A stretch of 63,081 bases of DNA, counting the filler, from Octopus bimaculoides (taxonomy: Eukaryota): NCBI RefSeq assembly GCF_001194135.2. It is 7 parts of 6 records of this genome, joined end to end, with 100 filler letters (N's around TTAATTAATTAA, not from the genome) between each part and the next. Parts side by side here need not be neighbours in the genome. Positions count along the whole stretch, not along the records: positions 38,087 to 44,742 come from NC_069009.1; 6 more parts are not named here. The stretch is one strand, 5' to 3'. This document shows positions 37,956 to 44,605 of the stretch, in pieces. The translations under genes were made by a program, and so were the position numbers. The number at the start of each line of letters is the position of its first letter. The first letter of the stretch is position 1. Below the pieces are notes generated by a model, which saw nothing but the letters and a program-made list of their open reading frames with translations, was not told the DNA's origin and did no database searches.

Positions 37956-38628
37956 TATATTAATACACACACACACACACATTATANNNNNNNNNNNNNN
38001 NNNNNNNNNNNNNNNNNNNNNNNNNNNNNNTTAATTAATTAANNNNNNNNNNNNNNNNNNNNNNNNNNNNNNNNNNNNNNNNNNNNTATATATATATATA
38101 TATATATATATTCACACACACAAACACATATATACTTCAACACACACACAAACACACACTCATACACACAAAAGCACCCACTTATTAACAATCGCAGCTT
38201 ATATAACCAACTGCTTATTGTTACAAAAATTAACCGAACCCAGACTCTTTTACGAGTTCACCGTTTATCAGCCAGTCTGTGTACATATGCACATGTGTGT
38301 GTGTGTGTGTGTGTGAGTGAACGCATGTGTGCTGCTTATGACGTCAGAAGCAGTGAACGTGAGATGAACATCAACAAACGAGTGTTTCTTTTTCCTTTTC
38401 TTGTACCATTTCTTGAGAGCAGGTATCACAGGAATATGAGGCCTACCAGAGTTTAACCATTAACCATTTAAGAATATTGTATCATGTTAGAAAATCTCTG
38501 CTCAAGATAGAAGCAGTTATACAAACCAAAAATGTACTGCTTGTGGGCTACTTTAAAGCGGCAGTCCTATTAAGGAGGCGACGATACTGTAATTTAACCC
38601 CAGGAAGACATAGCCTCCAGCTAGTTTA

Positions 38629-39166
38629 TTCACGAAACAAATTGAAGGCATGACTGATCTCAATTACTGGGACCGCCTTAAAGCCTTGAAGCTCTACTCT
38701 CTCCAGCGCCGCCGCAAGCGGTACATCATCTGTACGATGTGGAGAATATACCACCAGCATTGCCCAAACGACATGAACATTAGTTTCAAGGTTCATCCAA
38801 GGCTGGGACCATGGGCCATATGTCCCCTGCTCAATTCAGGATCACAACATATAGGTACACTGCGGCATAATTTCTTTTCCTCAACAAGCCCTGCCCTGTT
38901 TAATATTGTCCCGAAACAGATAAAAGAGGAAAAGGATCCCATCACCTTTAAACGGAGTCTGGACAGATTTCTTCAAGGAATACCAGACAAGCCACCCATA
39001 CCTGGATACAACTCACTCAATAAGAACTCACTACTTGAATGGACCATAAACAAAACTCGACTTAAAAAGGATTTAGATAATCCTATCAGGTGGTGCTATC
39101 AAGTTAGACATGGCCTGGACCAATCTTTGGTCGAAACATATCTAAGTTTTATCTAAGTTTATCTAA
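38629..39166 (+). mobile_element. 5'-truncated CR1-group LINE, ORF2 C-terminus plus 3' tandem tail
   Basis: FTKQIEGMTDLNYWDRLKALKLYSLQRRRKRYII...FNIVPKQI...FKRSLDRFLQGIPDKP...NSL is typical of the post-RT region of CR1-group LINEs. Ends in (ATCTAAGTTT)n-like repeats at 39140-39166. Confidence 0.85.
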
Positions 39167-39339
39167 TGCGCTTCTCACATCTGATATTTATTGCAAGTGA
39201 GAGATAACTTCTGTCACCCTAGCTTCAGGACCATGTGGTTTTGATCTGTATTGTGTCTCCTCGGTGGTGGGCACTTGTTGCCAGGCATGGCTGCAGTTTA
39301 CCTTGCCTGCAATATATAGAAAACACAGTAGTAAAGATT

Positions 39340-39430
39340 GTTTGCCAACATAACAAGGCAGTCCTGGTTTAGGACGAATGTTGCTGTAACTTAGCCCCAG
39401 GAAACATCGTCTTCAGCTGGCTATACGACA
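39340..39430 (+). repeat. Unclassified repeat, homologous to 38563-38626
   Basis: GGCAGTCCT...TGTAA.TTA.CCCCAGGAA.ACAT.G.CT.CAGCT.G occurs on both sides of the LINE fragment. Confidence 0.6.
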
Positions 39431-39705
39431 CAATCTGTGTCCTTATATTTTGGGGGAATTCAGCACTGAATTTCCCTGGAGAACATTCTTTTCGTTTATG
39501 GTTTGACCGTTGATGGTCAATTTCTAGCGTAAAGGATGTCCACTTAGTGGTCATCCCTTCTCACATGTATGTAATATAATTTTTCTGAATTTTCAGAATT
39601 TTCTTTATGCCAGGCCACTGGTTTTAAATTGGTGTTAATTAAATTAATATCCAATTTATTACCCCCTTTTTATTTAAATTATAACGTTTGAATGAAAAAT
39701 ATCCC

Positions 39706-39922
39706 TTTCTACTATAGGCACAAGGCCTGGATTTTGTGGGGAGGGGCACAGTCAATCACATCAATCCCAATACTCAAATGGTACTTAATTTATCGACACC
39801 CCCCTGAAAGGACAAAAGGCAAAGCTGACCTCGGCGGAATTTGAACTCAGAATGTAGCGATGGGTGAAACACCATTATGCATTTCGCCCGGCATGTTAAC
39901 AGTTCTGCCAGCTCACAGCCTT
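39706..39922 (-). mobile_element. SINE family B
   Basis: AAAGGCAAAGCTGACCTCGGCGGAATTTGAACTCAGAATG...TTCTGCCAGCTCACAGCCTT. Confidence 0.88.
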
Positions 39923-40079
39923 AAAATGAAAAATATTCCGTCTACACAAATGTATGTGCAAGCATATGTATATATATCTATGCATGCATGTACAATATAC
40001 ATGTGTATATCTACATATATCTATATCTACATATGTATGTCTATGTATATATATATGTATCTATATATATGTGTATGTA

Positions 40080-40138
<59 letters not shown>

Positions 40139-40297
40139 GTATGTATATATATATATATTACTATCATCATCATCTCACATATACAAGAGATATGCTTGAT
40201 CATGTTGCTGGCAACAAGAGATTCCATCTGTTATCACAAACTGAATTCTGATAAAATGATACATTATATATGTATATATATATATATACATATATAC

Positions 40298-40344
<47 letters not shown>

Positions 40345-40850
40345 NNNNNNNNNNNNNNNNNNNNNNNNNNNNNNNNNNNNNNNNNNNNNNNNNNNNNNNN
40401 NNNNNNNNNNNNNNNNNNNNNNNNNNNNNNNNNNNNNNNNNNNNNNNNNNNNNNNNNNNNNNNNNNNNNNNNNNNNNNNNNNNNNNNNNNNNNNNNNNNN
40501 NNNNNNNNNNNNNNNNNNNNNNNNNNNNNNNNNNNNNNNNNNNNNNNNNNNNNNNNNNNNNNNNNNNNNNNNNNNNNNNNNNNNNNNNNNNNNNNNNNNN
40601 NNNNNNNNNNNNNNNNNNNNNNNNNNNNNNNNNNNNNNNNNNNNNNNNNNNNNNNNNNNNNNNNNNNNNNNNNNNNNNNNNNNNNNNNNNNNNNNNNNNN
40701 NNNNNNNNNNNNNNNNNNNNNNNNNNNNNNNNNNNNNNNNNNNNNNNNNNNNNNNNNNNNNNNNNNNNNNNNNNNNNNNNNNNNNNNNNNNNNNNNNNNN
40801 NNNNNNNNNNNNNNNNNNNNNNNNNNNNNNNNNNNNNNNNNNNNNNNNNN

Positions 40851-40888
<38 letters not shown>

Positions 40889-40999
40889 TACATGCACATA
40901 CACAAACGTATATATGTATATACATGCACATACAGACACATGTATGTGTAAGTATGTTTATACATACTTTATGTACAGTTATAGATACAGATACCCATA

Positions 41000-41050
<51 letters not shown>

Positions 41051-41517
41051 GGTATCTAGGGTATACAGCTACAGACAGCATAACCCAAAGATGCACAGCT
41101 CAAACAACTCAAGAAGTACATTGGTAAAGCAGCTGCTTCTCTGTCGAGACCTCCCCCCACCCACGAAAAATAAGGAAATATAGAAGGAGAGAAATGAAAG
41201 TATGGAAGTACAAACAGATCATAACATCTATCAAGGTCAGGGCATACAGGACTTGTGTTGGTTTGTTATCAACGGACCTTTGGAAGTGAGTGTGGTTTGG
41301 ACAACATACTGCAGACAAGATTACAAACTGCGTCTGGTATGATCCATACATTTGCACATACACGTGTGTGTGTGTGTGTTCAAAGTGTCTATAAAGTGTG
41401 TGTGTGATTCAAAATAATTGTAGCTTTGTAACCATACATGATAGAACTAAATTGCACACACTTTATACACACCCTGTGCGTGTATGTGTATATATGATGC
41501 AGAAGGATCATTAAACA

Positions 41518-42125
41518 GGCGCAGGAGTGGCTGTGTGGTAAGTAGCTTTTAATGTAGCACCGGCATCAGTGCTTTTAATGTGGAACTAGCACCAGTGCTA
41601 TTAATGTGGCACCAGCACCAGTGCTTTTAATGTGGCTCCAGTGCTATTAATGTAGCACCAGCATCAGTGCTTTTAATGTGGCACCAACATCAATGCTTTT
41701 AATGTGGCACCAGTGCTTATAATGTAGCACCAGCACCAGTGCTATTAATGTGGCTCCAACACCAATGCTTTTAATGTGGTACCAGTGCTATTAACATAGC
41801 ACAAGCACCAGTGCTTTTAATGTGGCACTAGCACTATTAATGTGGCACCAACATCAATGCTTTTAATGTGACACCTGCATGAGCAATGTGTGTGTGTGTG
41901 TCTGTGTTTGTCCCCCGCCACCATCACCACCTGACAACCAGTGTTGGTATGTTTACATCCCCCTAATATAACAGTCCAGTGAATGAGACCGATAGAATAG
42001 GCACCAGGTTTAAAAACAAATAAGCATTGGGGTCAGTCCATTCGACTCAAATTTCTTAAAGGCAGTGCCCCAGCATGGCCGTAGTCTAACGACAGAAACC
42101 AGCAAAAGATAGAAGATAAAGATAG
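41518..42125 (+). mobile_element. SINE family A with its middle replaced by a minisatellite
   Basis: Head GGCGCAGGAGTGGCTGTGTGGTAAGTAGCTT at 41518-41548 and 3' half GTCTGTGTTTGTCCCC...GTGCCCCAGCATGGCCGTAGTC at about 41885-42125. Confidence 0.75.
41545..41878. repeat. Minisatellite, about 14 units of GCT(T/A)TTAATGTGGCACCAGCACCAGT (26 or 20 bp)
   Basis: Units parsed by eye. A 26-26-20 pattern gives a 72-bp higher-order period. Confidence 0.93.
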
Positions 42126-42644
42126 AGTGTAGAACCACGGTGCCTGTAACCAAGTTGTTCCGTTGTGTTGTACACGCATACCTCTAAAGCAACATTATAC
42201 AGCCTGTCACATACATTCCTCTTTTAATGTAATGCATCCATCTGATGTGAGTTAGTACTCGTAGCAGCCTAGTAATAGTATATCCTGGTTGAACAAAAAT
42301 ACAGCCAAAAACAGAGCATACACAAATGAAGAGAGTCTGCTTTAATGTGTTGTAATGCTATCGTAGGGTTAATTGTGAAAAATCTGATACTGTAAGACAT
42401 GTTAGATAGCGGTTATGGCTTTATAGTACACTGCTTTTCTGTATGGTTACCATGGTTACTTGTTTGTTTGTTTAACACTAAATCAGTCCCTGATCCAGTA
42501 GACTTATGATCAAAGATGTTCCAGCCATGACCATCCCATCTTTCATTCAGGCATTGTGTATTTAGGACTACATTATTTAATGTATAGTATGAAGGTTATA
42601 GCTATATAGTACTTTTTTTAGCCCAAGGTCAGTCCTGATCTTTT

Positions 42645-42800
42645 TTTATTTTTTCATTCTTTTACTTGTTTCAGTTGTTTGACTGTGGCCATGCTGGAGC
42701 ACCACCTTTAGTCGAGCAAATCGACCCCAGGACTTATTCTATTGGTCTCTTTTTGCCGAACCGCTAAGTCATCGGTTGTCAAGCGATGCTGGGGGGACAA

Positions 42801-42858
<58 letters not shown>

Positions 42859-43020
42859 GACGGGCTTCTCTCAGTTTCTGTCTACCAAATCTATTTACAA
42901 AGCTTTGGCCAGCCCAAGGTTATAATAGAAGGCACTTGCCCAAAGTGCCACACCGTGGGACTGAACCCAGGACCATGTGGTTGAGAAACAAGCTTCTTAC
43001 CACACAGCTATGCCTGCACC
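42645..43020 (-). mobile_element. Full-length SINE family A with internal (TA)n(TG)n
   Basis: Head rc GGTGCAGGCATAGCTGTGTGGTAAGAAGC...GGTTCAGTCCC; tail rc CAGCATGGCCACAGTCAAACAACTGAAACAAGTAAAA. Confidence 0.92.
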
Positions 43021-43087
43021 TATATTTTTTGTTAATTTTTTTGTTTGTTTGCTTTGTTTGTTGGATTTCTTTCCTCTTTTCCTGCAG

Positions 43088-43400
43088 TTCCAGTTGACTG
43101 CATCTGCTGGCTTTGTAACAAGAGAAATCACTGAAGCGGAAACAAGCCATGACATAATAGTTTCTGCCTCCACTGCCAGGCTAAATATAGAAATGGTCCG
43201 AGACAAGGAAGACATAACGCTCGGTTCCACATGACTGCATATCACACCGGCTGAATGCTGACCAACGGTGCAAAGTTGGCAGCTTCGAGTTGCAAGACCG
43301 GTGCTCCCTGCTGCAGGTCCTGCAGATGGTTTGCGACAACTGACGTGTGCATCCTAGGTCATGTGACGCAATCTACCCAACCTGTTACCCCTCTGTTTTC
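43088..43400 (+). other. GC-rich coding-like block: candidate terminal exon or decayed transposase
   Basis: Long pyrimidine tract ending cctgcag, then FQLTASAGFVTREITEAETSHDIIVSASTARLNIEMVRDKEDITLGST* (43088-43234). Weak resemblance to the C-terminal half of hAT-type transposases. Confidence 0.25.
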
Positions 43401-43534
43401 AAAGTGGAAACTGAAATATTTAAGGTTGGGGGGGGGGCGATTGGTAGGGTCTGCAGAAGATCGGATACAATACCTTGTGGTATTCATTGTGGTTCTTTAA
43501 GATCATCATCATCATCATCATCATCATCGTTAAG

Positions 43535-44329
43535 CAGACATAACTAACGACACACTGACATAGCCTCCATAGGCTGTTTGTGGTTAAACAGACATAACTA
43601 ATGACACACACAAACAGCCATAACTAATCAAAGGGTGAGAGAAAGAGAATTCTGGCTACACAGACATAACTAATGATGCAGAAAGACACACAGACAATCT
43701 ATAGTTCAACAGACATAACTAATCCCATGTATTGACAAACACCGGTTAAACAGACAGATCTGGTCAGACATAACTAATGACACACCTAAATGCAAGGAAA
43801 TCTCAGGTTTAGCAGACATAACTAATGACACACACGCACAGACATAACTAACCGCATACATACTGAGAAGATCTGGTTAAAAAGACATAACTAATGACAC
43901 ACCTAAATGCAAGGAAATCTCAGGTTTAGCAGACAACTAATGACACACACACACAGACATAACTAACCGCATACAGACTGAGAAGATCTGGTTAAAAAGA
44001 CATAACTAATGACACAACTAAACGCAAGGAAATCTCAGGTTTAGCAGACATAACTAATGACACAACTAAATGCAAGGAAATCTCAGGTTTAGCAGACATA
44101 ACTAATGACACACACACACAGACATAACTAACCGCATACATACTGAGAAGATCTGGTTAAAAAGACATAACTAATGACACACCTAAATGCAAGGAAATCT
44201 CAGGTTTAGCAGACCTAACTAACGACACACATACAGACATAACTAATCGCAAATGCACAAGAATGGTCTCTGATTAACAGACATAACTAACGACACACCG
44301 GATAAACACAATCTCGAGTTAACAAAGAC
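43535..44329. repeat. Core-and-spacer tandem array: 19 copies of CAGACATAACTAA(TGACACAC)
   Basis: Cores at 43535, 43589, 43615, 43661, 43710, 43765, 43813, 43839, 43882, 43930, 43954, 43997, 44045, 44093, 44119, 44162, 44210, 44234, 44278. Outer spacers are unique; inner spacers form a ~117-bp higher-order repeat. Confidence 0.95.
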
Positions 44330-44448
44330 GCACACATACACATAAACACACACACACACACACACACATGCACGCGTGCATGCGCACACACACGCACACA
44401 CACACAGTCTGCCTGTTTTTCTGCTTAAGCCAGTTCTCGTGCACTCAC

Positions 44449-44505
44449 CTTCCGGAACTGAAAAAAGATCTTTTTCAAGATCTTTGAAGTGACATGATAT
44501 GTCTC
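44449..44505 (-). CDS. Candidate 57-bp symmetric exon (DISCHFKDLEKDLFSVPE or ETYHVTSKILKKIFFQFRK)
   Basis: ctaatttgcgcag acceptor with a CTAAT branch-like site and strong donor AAG|gtgagt. Length divisible by 3; two frames open. Confidence 0.3.
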
Positions 44506-44605
44506 CTGCGCAAATTAGATTCTTGGGTACCCAGGTGGAAGAACACAGCACGGGTGGGTAGACAGTGGGCACACAGACAGGCAGACAAATAGACAGACAG
44601 ATATT

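What the first reader, a model, noticed from the sequence alone, without database searches (positions are those of the whole stretch)
43535..44329. Repeat-spacer array of 19 near-invariant CAGACATAACTAA cores, each an ACUAAY (Quaking/SF1-type) site
Seen: a 13-bp core is almost invariant while the DNA between cores is not. The first five and last two spacers are unrelated to each other, apart from a weak GGTT(T/A)A lead-in. The central spacers form a young ~117-bp higher-order repeat with periods 48/26/43. Neutral minisatellite decay should erode core and spacer equally, so selective conservation of the core suggests a binding-site array. Established: ACUAAY with an adjacent UAAY half-site is the STAR-family (QKI/How, SF1/BBP) recognition element. 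Read on the + strand, every intact core has AUAACUAAY, and a + strand gene may span this region (exon 26981). Inference: an intronic RBP sponge or splicing element, a homotypic TF-site cluster, or transposon subterminal repeats next to the possibly hAT-like block at 43088-43400. The architecture superficially mimics a CRISPR array, but this is a eukaryote and the spacers are not uniform.
Basis: partly seen in the sequence, partly recalled or inferred. Interest (0 to 1): 0.72.

Follow-up and report, generated by a model that had tools for sequence, protein, structure and literature searches.

The report
Minisatellite with a conserved 13-bp box
This is an ~830-bp tandem repeat in repeat-rich, octopus-like DNA in which one 13-bp box has stayed almost unchanged while the rest of each unit has decayed, a pattern already known from satellite DNA; nothing available here shows that it works as an RNA-binding-protein sponge.

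Summary
The cores are real. CAGACATAACTAA occurs 18 times at two or fewer mismatches (0.38 expected), all on the + strand, and a 19th core carries a 2-nt deletion.

It is not a repeat-spacer array. The whole stretch is about 6.5 head-to-tail copies of a ~117-bp higher-order repeat with three subunits (A 48, B 26, C 43 bp). The outer "unrelated" spacers align weakly but recognisably to their matching subunit.

The contrast between core and spacer holds. Between old copies the box is 94-97% identical and the rest 52-54% (P about 2e-7), roughly a 27-fold difference in rate. So the box is under sequence-specific constraint.

Conservation covers 13 nt, and 21 nt in A and B subunits. That is much more than the 6-8 nt a STAR protein reads, and no TACTAAC is present. 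No coding remnant and no terminal inverted repeat was found in the flanks. Exchange junctions fall inside the box.

Best reading: a satellite-type conserved box, meaning a DNA recognition or junction site, possibly carried by a mobile element.

Transcription, genomic copy number and orthologues could not be tested. Interest is moderate to low.

The parts
43535..44329 (+). Array of 19 boxes (CAGACATAACTAA) in units of 24-55 bp. It is about 6.5 copies of a three-subunit A-B-C higher-order repeat.
43536..43661 (+). H1, an old copy of the higher-order repeat (units 1-3, A-B-C). The third box reads AGCCATAACTAA (43616-43627).
43662..43765 (+). H2, an old copy that lacks the B subunit. It ends in a truncated unit, AGACAGATCTGGTC (43752-43765), broken after AGACA.
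43766..43882 (+). H3, a young A-B-C copy (117 bp).
43883..43997 (+). H4, a young copy. Its B-subunit box has a 2-nt deletion (AGACAACTAA, 43931-43940).
43998..44045 (+). An extra A subunit, a 48-bp duplicate at 98% identity.
44046..44162 (+). H5, a young copy. The block 44045-44214 is 99% identical to 43765-43934.
44163..44278 (+). H6. Its A subunit is young and its B and C subunits are old. The B-subunit box reads AGACCTAACTAA (44211-44222).
44279..44366 (+). H7, a partial last copy. An A subunit is followed by a decayed B subunit that runs into the (CA)n tract.
   Evidence: nhmmer E = 1.4e-4
43502..43528 (.). (ATC)9 microsatellite a few bases upstream of the first unit (only GTTAAG lies between).
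44331..44406 (.). Imperfect (CA)n microsatellite continuing from the last, B-like unit.
43088..43500 (.). Unique left flank, 48% GC, CpG observed/expected 0.54. No protein homologue in any frame.
43023..43087 (.). T-rich (TTTG)n tract between the SINE copy and the left flank. It is either a pyrimidine tract ending in CAG or the complement of an A-rich retroposon tail. Undecided.
44407..44586 (.). Right flank rich in dyad symmetry. It has a 10-bp perfect inverted repeat (44407-44416 with 44577-44586) and the palindrome AAAAAGATCTTTTT (44462-44475).

Best explanation
This is a complex minisatellite: about 6.5 head-to-tail copies of a ~117-bp higher-order repeat. Its three subunits (A 48 bp, B 26 bp, C 43 bp) descend from one unit of about 45-50 bp.

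Shown:
- Every subunit begins with the box CAGACATAACTAA, extended to 21 bp (CAGACATAACTAAYGACACAC) in A and B subunits.
- The middle copies are young duplicates made by unequal exchange, and the outer copies are old.
- Between old copies the box has changed about 27 times less than the rest of the unit.
- The ends of the most recent duplication fall inside boxes, as does one internal deletion.

Inferred: the box is held by sequence-specific constraint. Most likely it is a recognition site read on double-stranded DNA by a sequence-specific protein, and it also serves as the preferred junction for the exchanges that grow and shrink the array. This is how conserved boxes in satellite DNA and binding-site arrays in mobile elements are thought to work.

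Not tested: whether the constraint acts on this locus, or acted on a dispersed element family from which this copy came.
For: - Box count is far above chance.
- The A-B-C order runs through the whole array.
- Outer spacers align to their matching subunit type.
- Box versus non-box identity is 35/36 against 47/90, P = 1.9e-7. The box columns were defined independently, as the sequence shared by A, B and C within one copy.
- The information profile is flat at 2 bits over 13 nt, with a sharp 5' edge and a partly conserved 3' extension.
- The 20-mer is present in 12 units, including old ones.
- The 99% identical 170-bp block starts at a box and ends inside a box after CAGAC, exactly where the two damaged boxes lie. 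The truncated unit also breaks after AGACA.
- There is no RNA structure on either strand (z = +0.98 and +1.32).
- There is no coding signal in the array or its flanks.
- Precedent: a 17-bp Box 1 with a single change between satellite monomers that are only 32% identical, located at monomer junctions in higher-order repeats (PMC3694981).
Against:
- Copy number in the source genome, orthologous loci and transcription could not be examined.
- Among the young copies the box is no better protected than the rest (34-36/36 against 79/81). Present-day constraint at this locus is therefore not shown, though power is low.
- All three box lesions lie in the 5' half. AACTAA followed by a pyrimidine is intact in 19 of 19, which is the part the STAR reading predicts to matter most (n is small, P about 0.1).
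Confidence: 0.45

Rival explanations
1. RNA decoy for STAR-family proteins (QKI or SF1). [quoted passage not shown]
For: - AACUAAY is intact in 19 of 19 boxes, and the next base varies only between C and U.
- The + strand RNA would be A/C-rich and unstructured.
- Precedent: the Gomafu tandem UACUAAC repeats bind SF1 (PMC3116199).
Against: - Conservation spans 13-21 nt. CAGACA and GACACAC are unexplained by a 6-8 nt STAR site.
- TACTAAC is absent, 0 of 19.
- The claimed half-site UAAC overlaps the core site.
- No evidence of transcription is available. No exon or coding homologue is found in the flanks.
- The Gomafu paper itself notes that clusters of TACTAAC occur in other transcripts without being conserved.
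Confidence: 0.07
2. No functional constraint. The box is kept by the array's own turnover: slippage or unequal exchange guided by microhomology that starts and ends in the box, plus very short conversion tracts centred on it.
For: - Exchange junctions map inside boxes.
- Conservation falls off gradually on both sides of the box (GGTTAAAC before it, YGACACAC after it), as short conversion tracts would produce.
- Young copies show no extra protection of the box.
Against: - Exchange copies whole units, so it cannot keep boxes intact in old outer units whose spacers are near saturation (about 0.76 against 0.03 substitutions per site).
- From general knowledge, conversion tracts as short as 13-21 nt between otherwise diverged flanks are not an established process.
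Confidence: 0.2
3. The array is the central repeat block of a dispersed non-autonomous mobile element, for example a Helentron-type HINE as in oysters or another DNA transposon. The box would have been conserved at the level of the element family.
For: - The layout is a microsatellite, then tandem repeats, then a right flank with a perfect 14-nt palindrome. This resembles Cg_HINE elements (PMC7492417).
- The surroundings are dense in SINE and LINE copies.
- The flanks are richer in GC (48%) than the neighbourhood.
Against: - Inverted matches between the flanks are at chance level. Only a 7-mer, CAGTTCC/GGAACTG, was found, one of seven such matches.
- No transposase or other protein remnant is present.
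- There is no second copy in the 6.6-kb piece.
- A search with the array's translated frame found no similar frame in the protein collection.
Confidence: 0.2
4. Related to small RNAs. The 21-nt box would be a target or sponge site for a small RNA, or the source of one.
For: - The conserved block in A and B units is 21 nt long.
- The 8-mer seed site of Ovu-Novel-19_5p, CACAGACA, occurs 5 times and overlaps the 5' half of the box.
Against: - That seed covers only CAGACA plus two bases outside the box, and occurs in 5 of 19 units.
- No other listed octopus miRNA seed k-mer matches the box on either strand, although the table was stored truncated.
- There are no hairpins and no Rfam family in the array.
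- An overlap with one seed among many is expected by chance.
Confidence: 0.04

Closest known systems
Conserved boxes in satellite DNA: the CENP-B box of alpha satellite, and Box 1 / Box 2 of Meloidogyne satellites (PMC3694981)
   Same: A short motif of 13-20 bp is nearly invariant among monomers that are otherwise 32-64% identical. The monomers are arranged in higher-order repeats, and the motif lies at monomer junctions and rearrangement points.
   Different: The present array is one 0.8-kb locus with units of 24-55 bp, not long arrays of ~170-bp monomers. The box has no similarity to the CENP-B box. Genomic abundance and chromosomal position are unknown.
Gomafu/MIAT tandem UACUAAC repeats that bind SF1 (PMC3116199)
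   Same: Several ACUAAY-type motifs lie in one orientation, separated by poorly conserved sequence.
   Different: Gomafu has about 7 copies of the exact UACUAAC in a proven, conserved nuclear RNA. Here the motif is AACUAAY, embedded in a longer invariant block, and transcription and conservation across species are unknown.
Binding-site arrays carried by mobile elements: the 12 Su(Hw) sites of gypsy and the 12-bp TNPA motifs of En/Spm (recalled from general knowledge, not checked with tools here)
   Same: Many copies of a ~12-bp motif sit within a few hundred bp, separated by variable spacers.
   Different: No element ends, coding remnants or further copies were found. All boxes here are direct repeats in a single cluster.
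Central repeats of Helentron HINE elements in the oyster (PMC7492417)
   Same: A molluscan genome, a short satellite-like array next to a microsatellite, and a palindrome in the right flank.
   Different: The defining 11-12 bp subterminal inverted repeats were not found above chance. HINE monomers are not described as having a conserved core with variable remainder.
CRISPR arrays
   Same: Only a superficial look of repeats alternating with spacers.
   Different: Eukaryotic repeat-rich context, a 13-bp non-palindromic core, unequal spacers that are homologous to each other, and no cas genes.

Membership tests
Minisatellite with higher-order repeat structure | Head-to-tail copies with a multi-unit period | tested here: met
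   TRF reports periods 115, 165 and 48 at 95-98%. nhmmer with the higher-order repeat profile finds 8 consecutive matches and none elsewhere.
Minisatellite with higher-order repeat structure | All units trace to a common ancestral unit | tested here: met
   Seven of the eight outer spacers align to a central subunit type (z 2.3-4.7; u18 fits A and C about equally); u3 is not significant. A and C share the tail ATCTnnGGTTAAA. B is A with its 3' part deleted.
Satellite-type conserved box | A short motif conserved far above the rest of the monomer | tested here: met
   35/36 against 47/90 identical columns, P = 1.9e-7.
Satellite-type conserved box | The motif lies at junctions of rearrangements | tested here: met
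   Both ends of the 99% identical 170-bp block lie in boxes, and the truncated unit breaks after AGACA. This rests on only three events.
Satellite-type conserved box | A high-copy family in the genome | not testable with these tools
STAR-protein (QKI/SF1) site array, Gomafu-like | ACUAAY present in the units | tested here: met
   19 of 19 boxes: 13 ACTAAT and 6 ACTAAC.
STAR-protein (QKI/SF1) site array, Gomafu-like | Optimal SF1 site UACUAAC | tested here: not met
   TACTAAC is found 0 times.
STAR-protein (QKI/SF1) site array, Gomafu-like | Conservation confined to the protein's 6-8 nt footprint | tested here: not met
   The invariant block is 13 nt, and 21 nt in A and B units. CAGACA is as invariant as ACTAA.
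STAR-protein (QKI/SF1) site array, Gomafu-like | Transcribed on the strand that carries the motif | not testable with these tools
STAR-protein (QKI/SF1) site array, Gomafu-like | Motif array conserved in related species | not testable with these tools
   No cephalopod genome can be searched at the DNA level. Pattern scans of three collections returned only unrelated tandem repeats.
DNA transposon with subterminal binding-site repeats (hAT, CACTA) | Terminal inverted repeats | tested here: not met
   The best inverted alignment between the flanks equals the mean of shuffles (144 of 300 shuffles as good).
DNA transposon with subterminal binding-site repeats (hAT, CACTA) | Transposase coding remnant | tested here: not met
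   No homologue for any frame of either flank. No flank frame reaches a Pfam curated cut-off. The full HMMER search gave only two spurious hits to repeat proteins.
Helentron HINE | 11-12 bp subterminal inverted repeats | tested here: not met
   Only a 7-mer match at chance frequency.
Helentron HINE | A microsatellite in the left flank, central tandem repeats and a 3' palindrome | tested here: met
   (ATC)9, the array, and AAAAAGATCTTTTT at 44462-44475. The right flank folds with z = -3.35.
CRISPR | Uniform, mutually unrelated spacers with cas genes in a prokaryote | tested here: not met
   Spacers are 12-43 nt and homologous to each other. The context is SINE/LINE-rich, octopus-like DNA.

The most novel reading that the evidence does not exclude
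The array is transcribed and works as a decoy RNA. Nineteen single-stranded AACUAAY sites, within a longer conserved 21-nt module, would hold QKI/SF1-type proteins and perhaps a second factor or a small RNA. That would be a cephalopod counterpart of Gomafu/MIAT that arose independently from a minisatellite.
Probability: 0.07. Interest if true: 0.7.

Novelty: new member of a known kind. Interest (0 to 1): 0.3.

Why it matters
If the constraint acts at this locus, the array offers about 20 natural replicates of a 13-21 bp recognition site for an unknown cephalopod factor. Its inner copies are young and its outer copies old, so it could be used to find that factor. It would also let one test whether conserved boxes in tandem repeats are protein-binding sites, recombination junctions or both. 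If the array turns out to be one copy of a dispersed element, it is routine repeat annotation.

Tried and rejected
I tried it once with Octopus bimaculoides run ids taken from the data statement of PMC8967140. So there is no RNA, DNA-depth or polymorphism data.
- Other copies through proteins: a search with the array's translated frame found nothing. Exact look-ups of four window reading frames were not on record.
- Other copies through DNA patterns: a two-box pattern gave 25 metagenome contigs, 5 bacterial genome contigs and 0 viral contigs. All are ordinary whole-unit tandem repeats that share the 12-mer by chance.
- Coding exon or transposase in the flanks: nine concatenated reading-frame segments from both flanks (both strands) gave no hit at E <= 0.1. 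Pfam gave nothing above its cut-offs. The full HMMER search of the 88-aa minus-strand frame gave two spurious hits to repeat proteins.
- Terminal inverted repeats: none above chance.
- Known RNA families: none in the array. The sub-threshold miRNA hits all lie in TA/CA microsatellites.
- RNA structure: none on either strand.
- Literature: the core string is in no relevant paper, and no paper found describes this repeat in cephalopods.
- Octopus miRNA seeds: only the Ovu-Novel-19 site overlaps the box.
- Sampling related genomes through LINE homologues: 40 kb from ENA assembly ERZ25071824 and two 1-kb contigs hold neither the box nor the SINE, so they come from other organisms.

Full report
OBSERVATION

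The 13-mer CAGACATAACTAA occurs 18 times at two or fewer mismatches: 13 exact and 5 with one mismatch. All copies are on the + strand between 43535 and 44290. Dinucleotide-preserving shuffles give 0.38 on average. A 19th core at 43931 has lost two bases and reads AGACAACTAA. No copy lies elsewhere in the 6.6-kb piece, even at three mismatches for the 20-mer or with a profile search. All 19 cores keep AACTAA followed by a pyrimidine: 13 ACTAAT and 6 ACTAAC. TRF confirms the young central repeat with periods of 115, 165 and 48 bp at 95-98% identity.

ANATOMY

Cutting the array at each core gives units of 24-55 bp. They fall into three types:
- A, 48 bp, with spacer TGACACACCTAAATGCAAGGAAATCTCAGGTTTAGC.
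- B, 26 bp, with spacer TGACACAC plus a short CA-rich end. It is A with its 3' part deleted.
- C, 43 bp, with spacer CCGCATACATACTGAGAAGATCTGGTTAAAA.

The order A-B-C runs through the whole array, not only the centre:
- H1, 43536-43661.
- H2, 43662-43765. It has no B subunit and ends in a truncated unit, AGACAGATCTGGTC.
- H3, 43766-43882.
- H4, 43883-43997.
- An extra A subunit, 43998-44045.
- H5, 44046-44162.
- H6, 44163-44278.
- H7, partial, 44279-44366. It decays into the (CA)n tract.

A profile built from the copies finds these eight consecutive matches (E from 1e-34 to 1e-4) and nothing else in the piece. Seven of the eight outer spacers align to a central subunit type better than nearly all shuffles (z 2.3-4.7; 0-8 of 500 shuffles as good); u18 fits A and C about equally. 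Only unit 3 does not. So the "spacers" are homologous, and the object is a diverged tandem repeat rather than a repeat-spacer array. It sits between an (ATC)9 and an imperfect (CA)n microsatellite.

IS THE CORE REALLY BETTER CONSERVED?

The box can be defined without looking at conservation between copies: it is the sequence shared by A, B and C within one copy. At those 36 columns, H1 and H3 are identical at 35. At the other 90 columns they are identical at 47 (hypergeometric P = 1.9e-7). H1 against H6 gives 34/36 and 49/90 (P = 5e-6). H3 against H6 gives 35/36 and 63/83 (P = 0.003). In crude Jukes-Cantor terms this is about 0.03 against 0.76 changes per site, a ratio of roughly 27.

The information profile over 11 non-redundant units is 2 bits, or close to it, at all 13 positions of CAGACATAACTAA. 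It has a sharp 5' edge. A partly conserved extension, YGACACA, follows, and a weak GGTTAAAC precedes. In A and B units the conserved block is 21 nt. The 20-mer AGACATAACTAATGACACAC is found in 12 units at three or fewer mismatches, including the old units 1, 2, 17 and 19.

Among the young copies H3, H4 and H5 the box is no better kept than the rest (34-36/36 against 79/81). Power here is low.

HOW THE ARRAY CHANGES

A block of about 170 bp (43765-43934) recurs at 44045-44214 with 99% identity. The alignment shows that the identity starts exactly at the C of a box and ends inside a box after CAGAC. At that right end sit the two damaged boxes: a 2-nt deletion at 43931 and an A-to-C change at 44215. 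The truncated unit at 43752 also breaks after AGACA. So three independent rearrangement junctions lie in the 5' half of the box. All three box lesions, including AGCC at 43616, are in the 5' half. AACTAA is intact in all 19.

CONTEXT

The piece is repeat-rich, octopus-like DNA.
- A LINE ORF2 tail at 38650-39156 has 29 homologues. One is named as an Octopus bimaculoides protein and one carries a reverse-transcriptase domain. In locus L034 the homologue follows endonuclease and reverse-transcriptase reading frames.
- The same tRNA-like SINE head occurs twice in opposite orientation, at about 41517 and about 43022.
- There is a 506-N assembly gap at 40345-40850.

The flanks of the array (43088-43500 and 44407-44600) are 47-48% GC against 37-39% nearby, with no CpG island. 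No reading frame of the flanks has a protein homologue. The one full HMMER search gave two hits to unrelated tandem-repeat proteins. Inverted matches between the flanks are at chance level. The right flank is rich in dyad symmetry (DNA fold z = -3.35) and holds a perfect 14-nt palindrome. Neither strand of the array folds better than shuffles, and no Rfam family matches it.

INTERPRETATION

The specific Quaking/SF1 reading is weaker.
- Those proteins read 6-8 nt. Conservation here covers 13-21 nt, and CAGACA is as invariant as ACUAA.
- The optimal SF1 site TACTAAC is absent.
- The supposed half-site overlaps the core site.
- The Gomafu paper, the best precedent, itself notes that clusters of TACTAAC in other transcripts are not conserved (PMC3116199).

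The pattern matches what is described for satellite DNA. In Meloidogyne, a 17-bp Box 1 differs by a single change between monomers that are only 32% identical. It lies in higher-order repeats and marks the junctions between monomers. The authors link this to protein binding and to transposition-like or illegitimate recombination (PMC3694981).

I therefore read the box as a DNA-level recognition and junction site. I leave open whether it belongs to a dispersed element. The layout of microsatellite, repeats and palindrome recalls oyster Helentron HINE elements (PMC7492417), but their defining subterminal inverted repeats were not found.

A purely mechanical explanation, in which exchange and very short conversion tracts centre on the box, fits the junction data. 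It cannot easily keep boxes intact in old units whose spacers are near saturation.

WHAT COULD NOT BE DONE

Transcription, strand, read depth and length polymorphism are therefore untested.
- No searchable collection holds the source genome. Pattern scans returned only unrelated tandem repeats, and look-ups based on proteins found nothing.
- Copy number and conservation at orthologous loci, which are the decisive tests, remain open.

VERDICT

The array is real and well defined, and it shows a genuine contrast between core and spacer. It belongs to a known kind of object: a tandem repeat with a conserved box. The RNA-sponge reading is not excluded, but it is unsupported and explains only part of the conserved block.

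Noticed in passing
window 41517-41879: A second minisatellite (periods 26, 46 and 72 bp, about 13 units) begins directly after a tRNA-like SINE head. It appears to be a SINE-internal segment that has expanded into a tandem array.
   Followed up: partly
window 41517-41548 (+) and 42960-43022 (-): Two copies of the same SINE head (GGYGCAGG..GCTGTGTGGTAAG.AGCTT) lie in opposite orientation. ARAGORN calls no tRNA. The right-hand copy ends 65 bp before the left flank of the array.
   Followed up: partly
window 38650-39156 (+): A 168-aa reading frame is the C-terminal tail of a LINE ORF2. It has 29 homologues, the best at 73% identity. One is named as an Octopus bimaculoides protein, and in L034 the homologue follows endonuclease and reverse-transcriptase frames.
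   Followed up: yes
window 40345-40850: A 506-N assembly gap lies between TA-rich microsatellites. The '328-nt inverted repeats' reported around it by the repeat finder are artefacts of the N run.
   Followed up: yes
window 43659, 43689, 43837, 43952, 44117, 44572: The 8-mer seed site CACAGACA, listed for the octopus miRNA Ovu-Novel-19_5p in the supplement of PMC9699675, occurs five times in the array, overlapping the 5' half of the box four times (the fifth, 43689, lies in a spacer), and once in the right flank. It is probably a chance overlap in CA-rich sequence.
   Followed up: partly
window 44407-44586: The right flank is rich in dyad symmetry. It has a 10-bp perfect inverted repeat (GTCTGCCTGT / ACAGGCAGAC) 160 bp apart around two GATC-centred palindromes. 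The DNA fold z-score is -3.35.
   Followed up: partly
window 43023-43087: A T-rich (TTTG)n tract ends in CAG. It could be a pyrimidine tract with a 3' splice site on the + strand, or the complement of a decayed A-rich retroposon tail on the - strand. The frame that follows has no protein homologue.
   Followed up: partly
window 38087-42900, several places: All sub-threshold Rfam miRNA matches (mir-297, mir-3149, mir-1277, mir-466) fall in TA/CA microsatellites and are low-complexity noise.
   Followed up: yes
L010 1-1440 (metagenome contig JGI24697J35500_11198427): An ordinary 30-bp satellite, in which the whole unit is conserved, shares the 14-mer AAGACATAACTAAC with the array. The rest of the unit is unrelated, so this is taken as chance.
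   Followed up: partly
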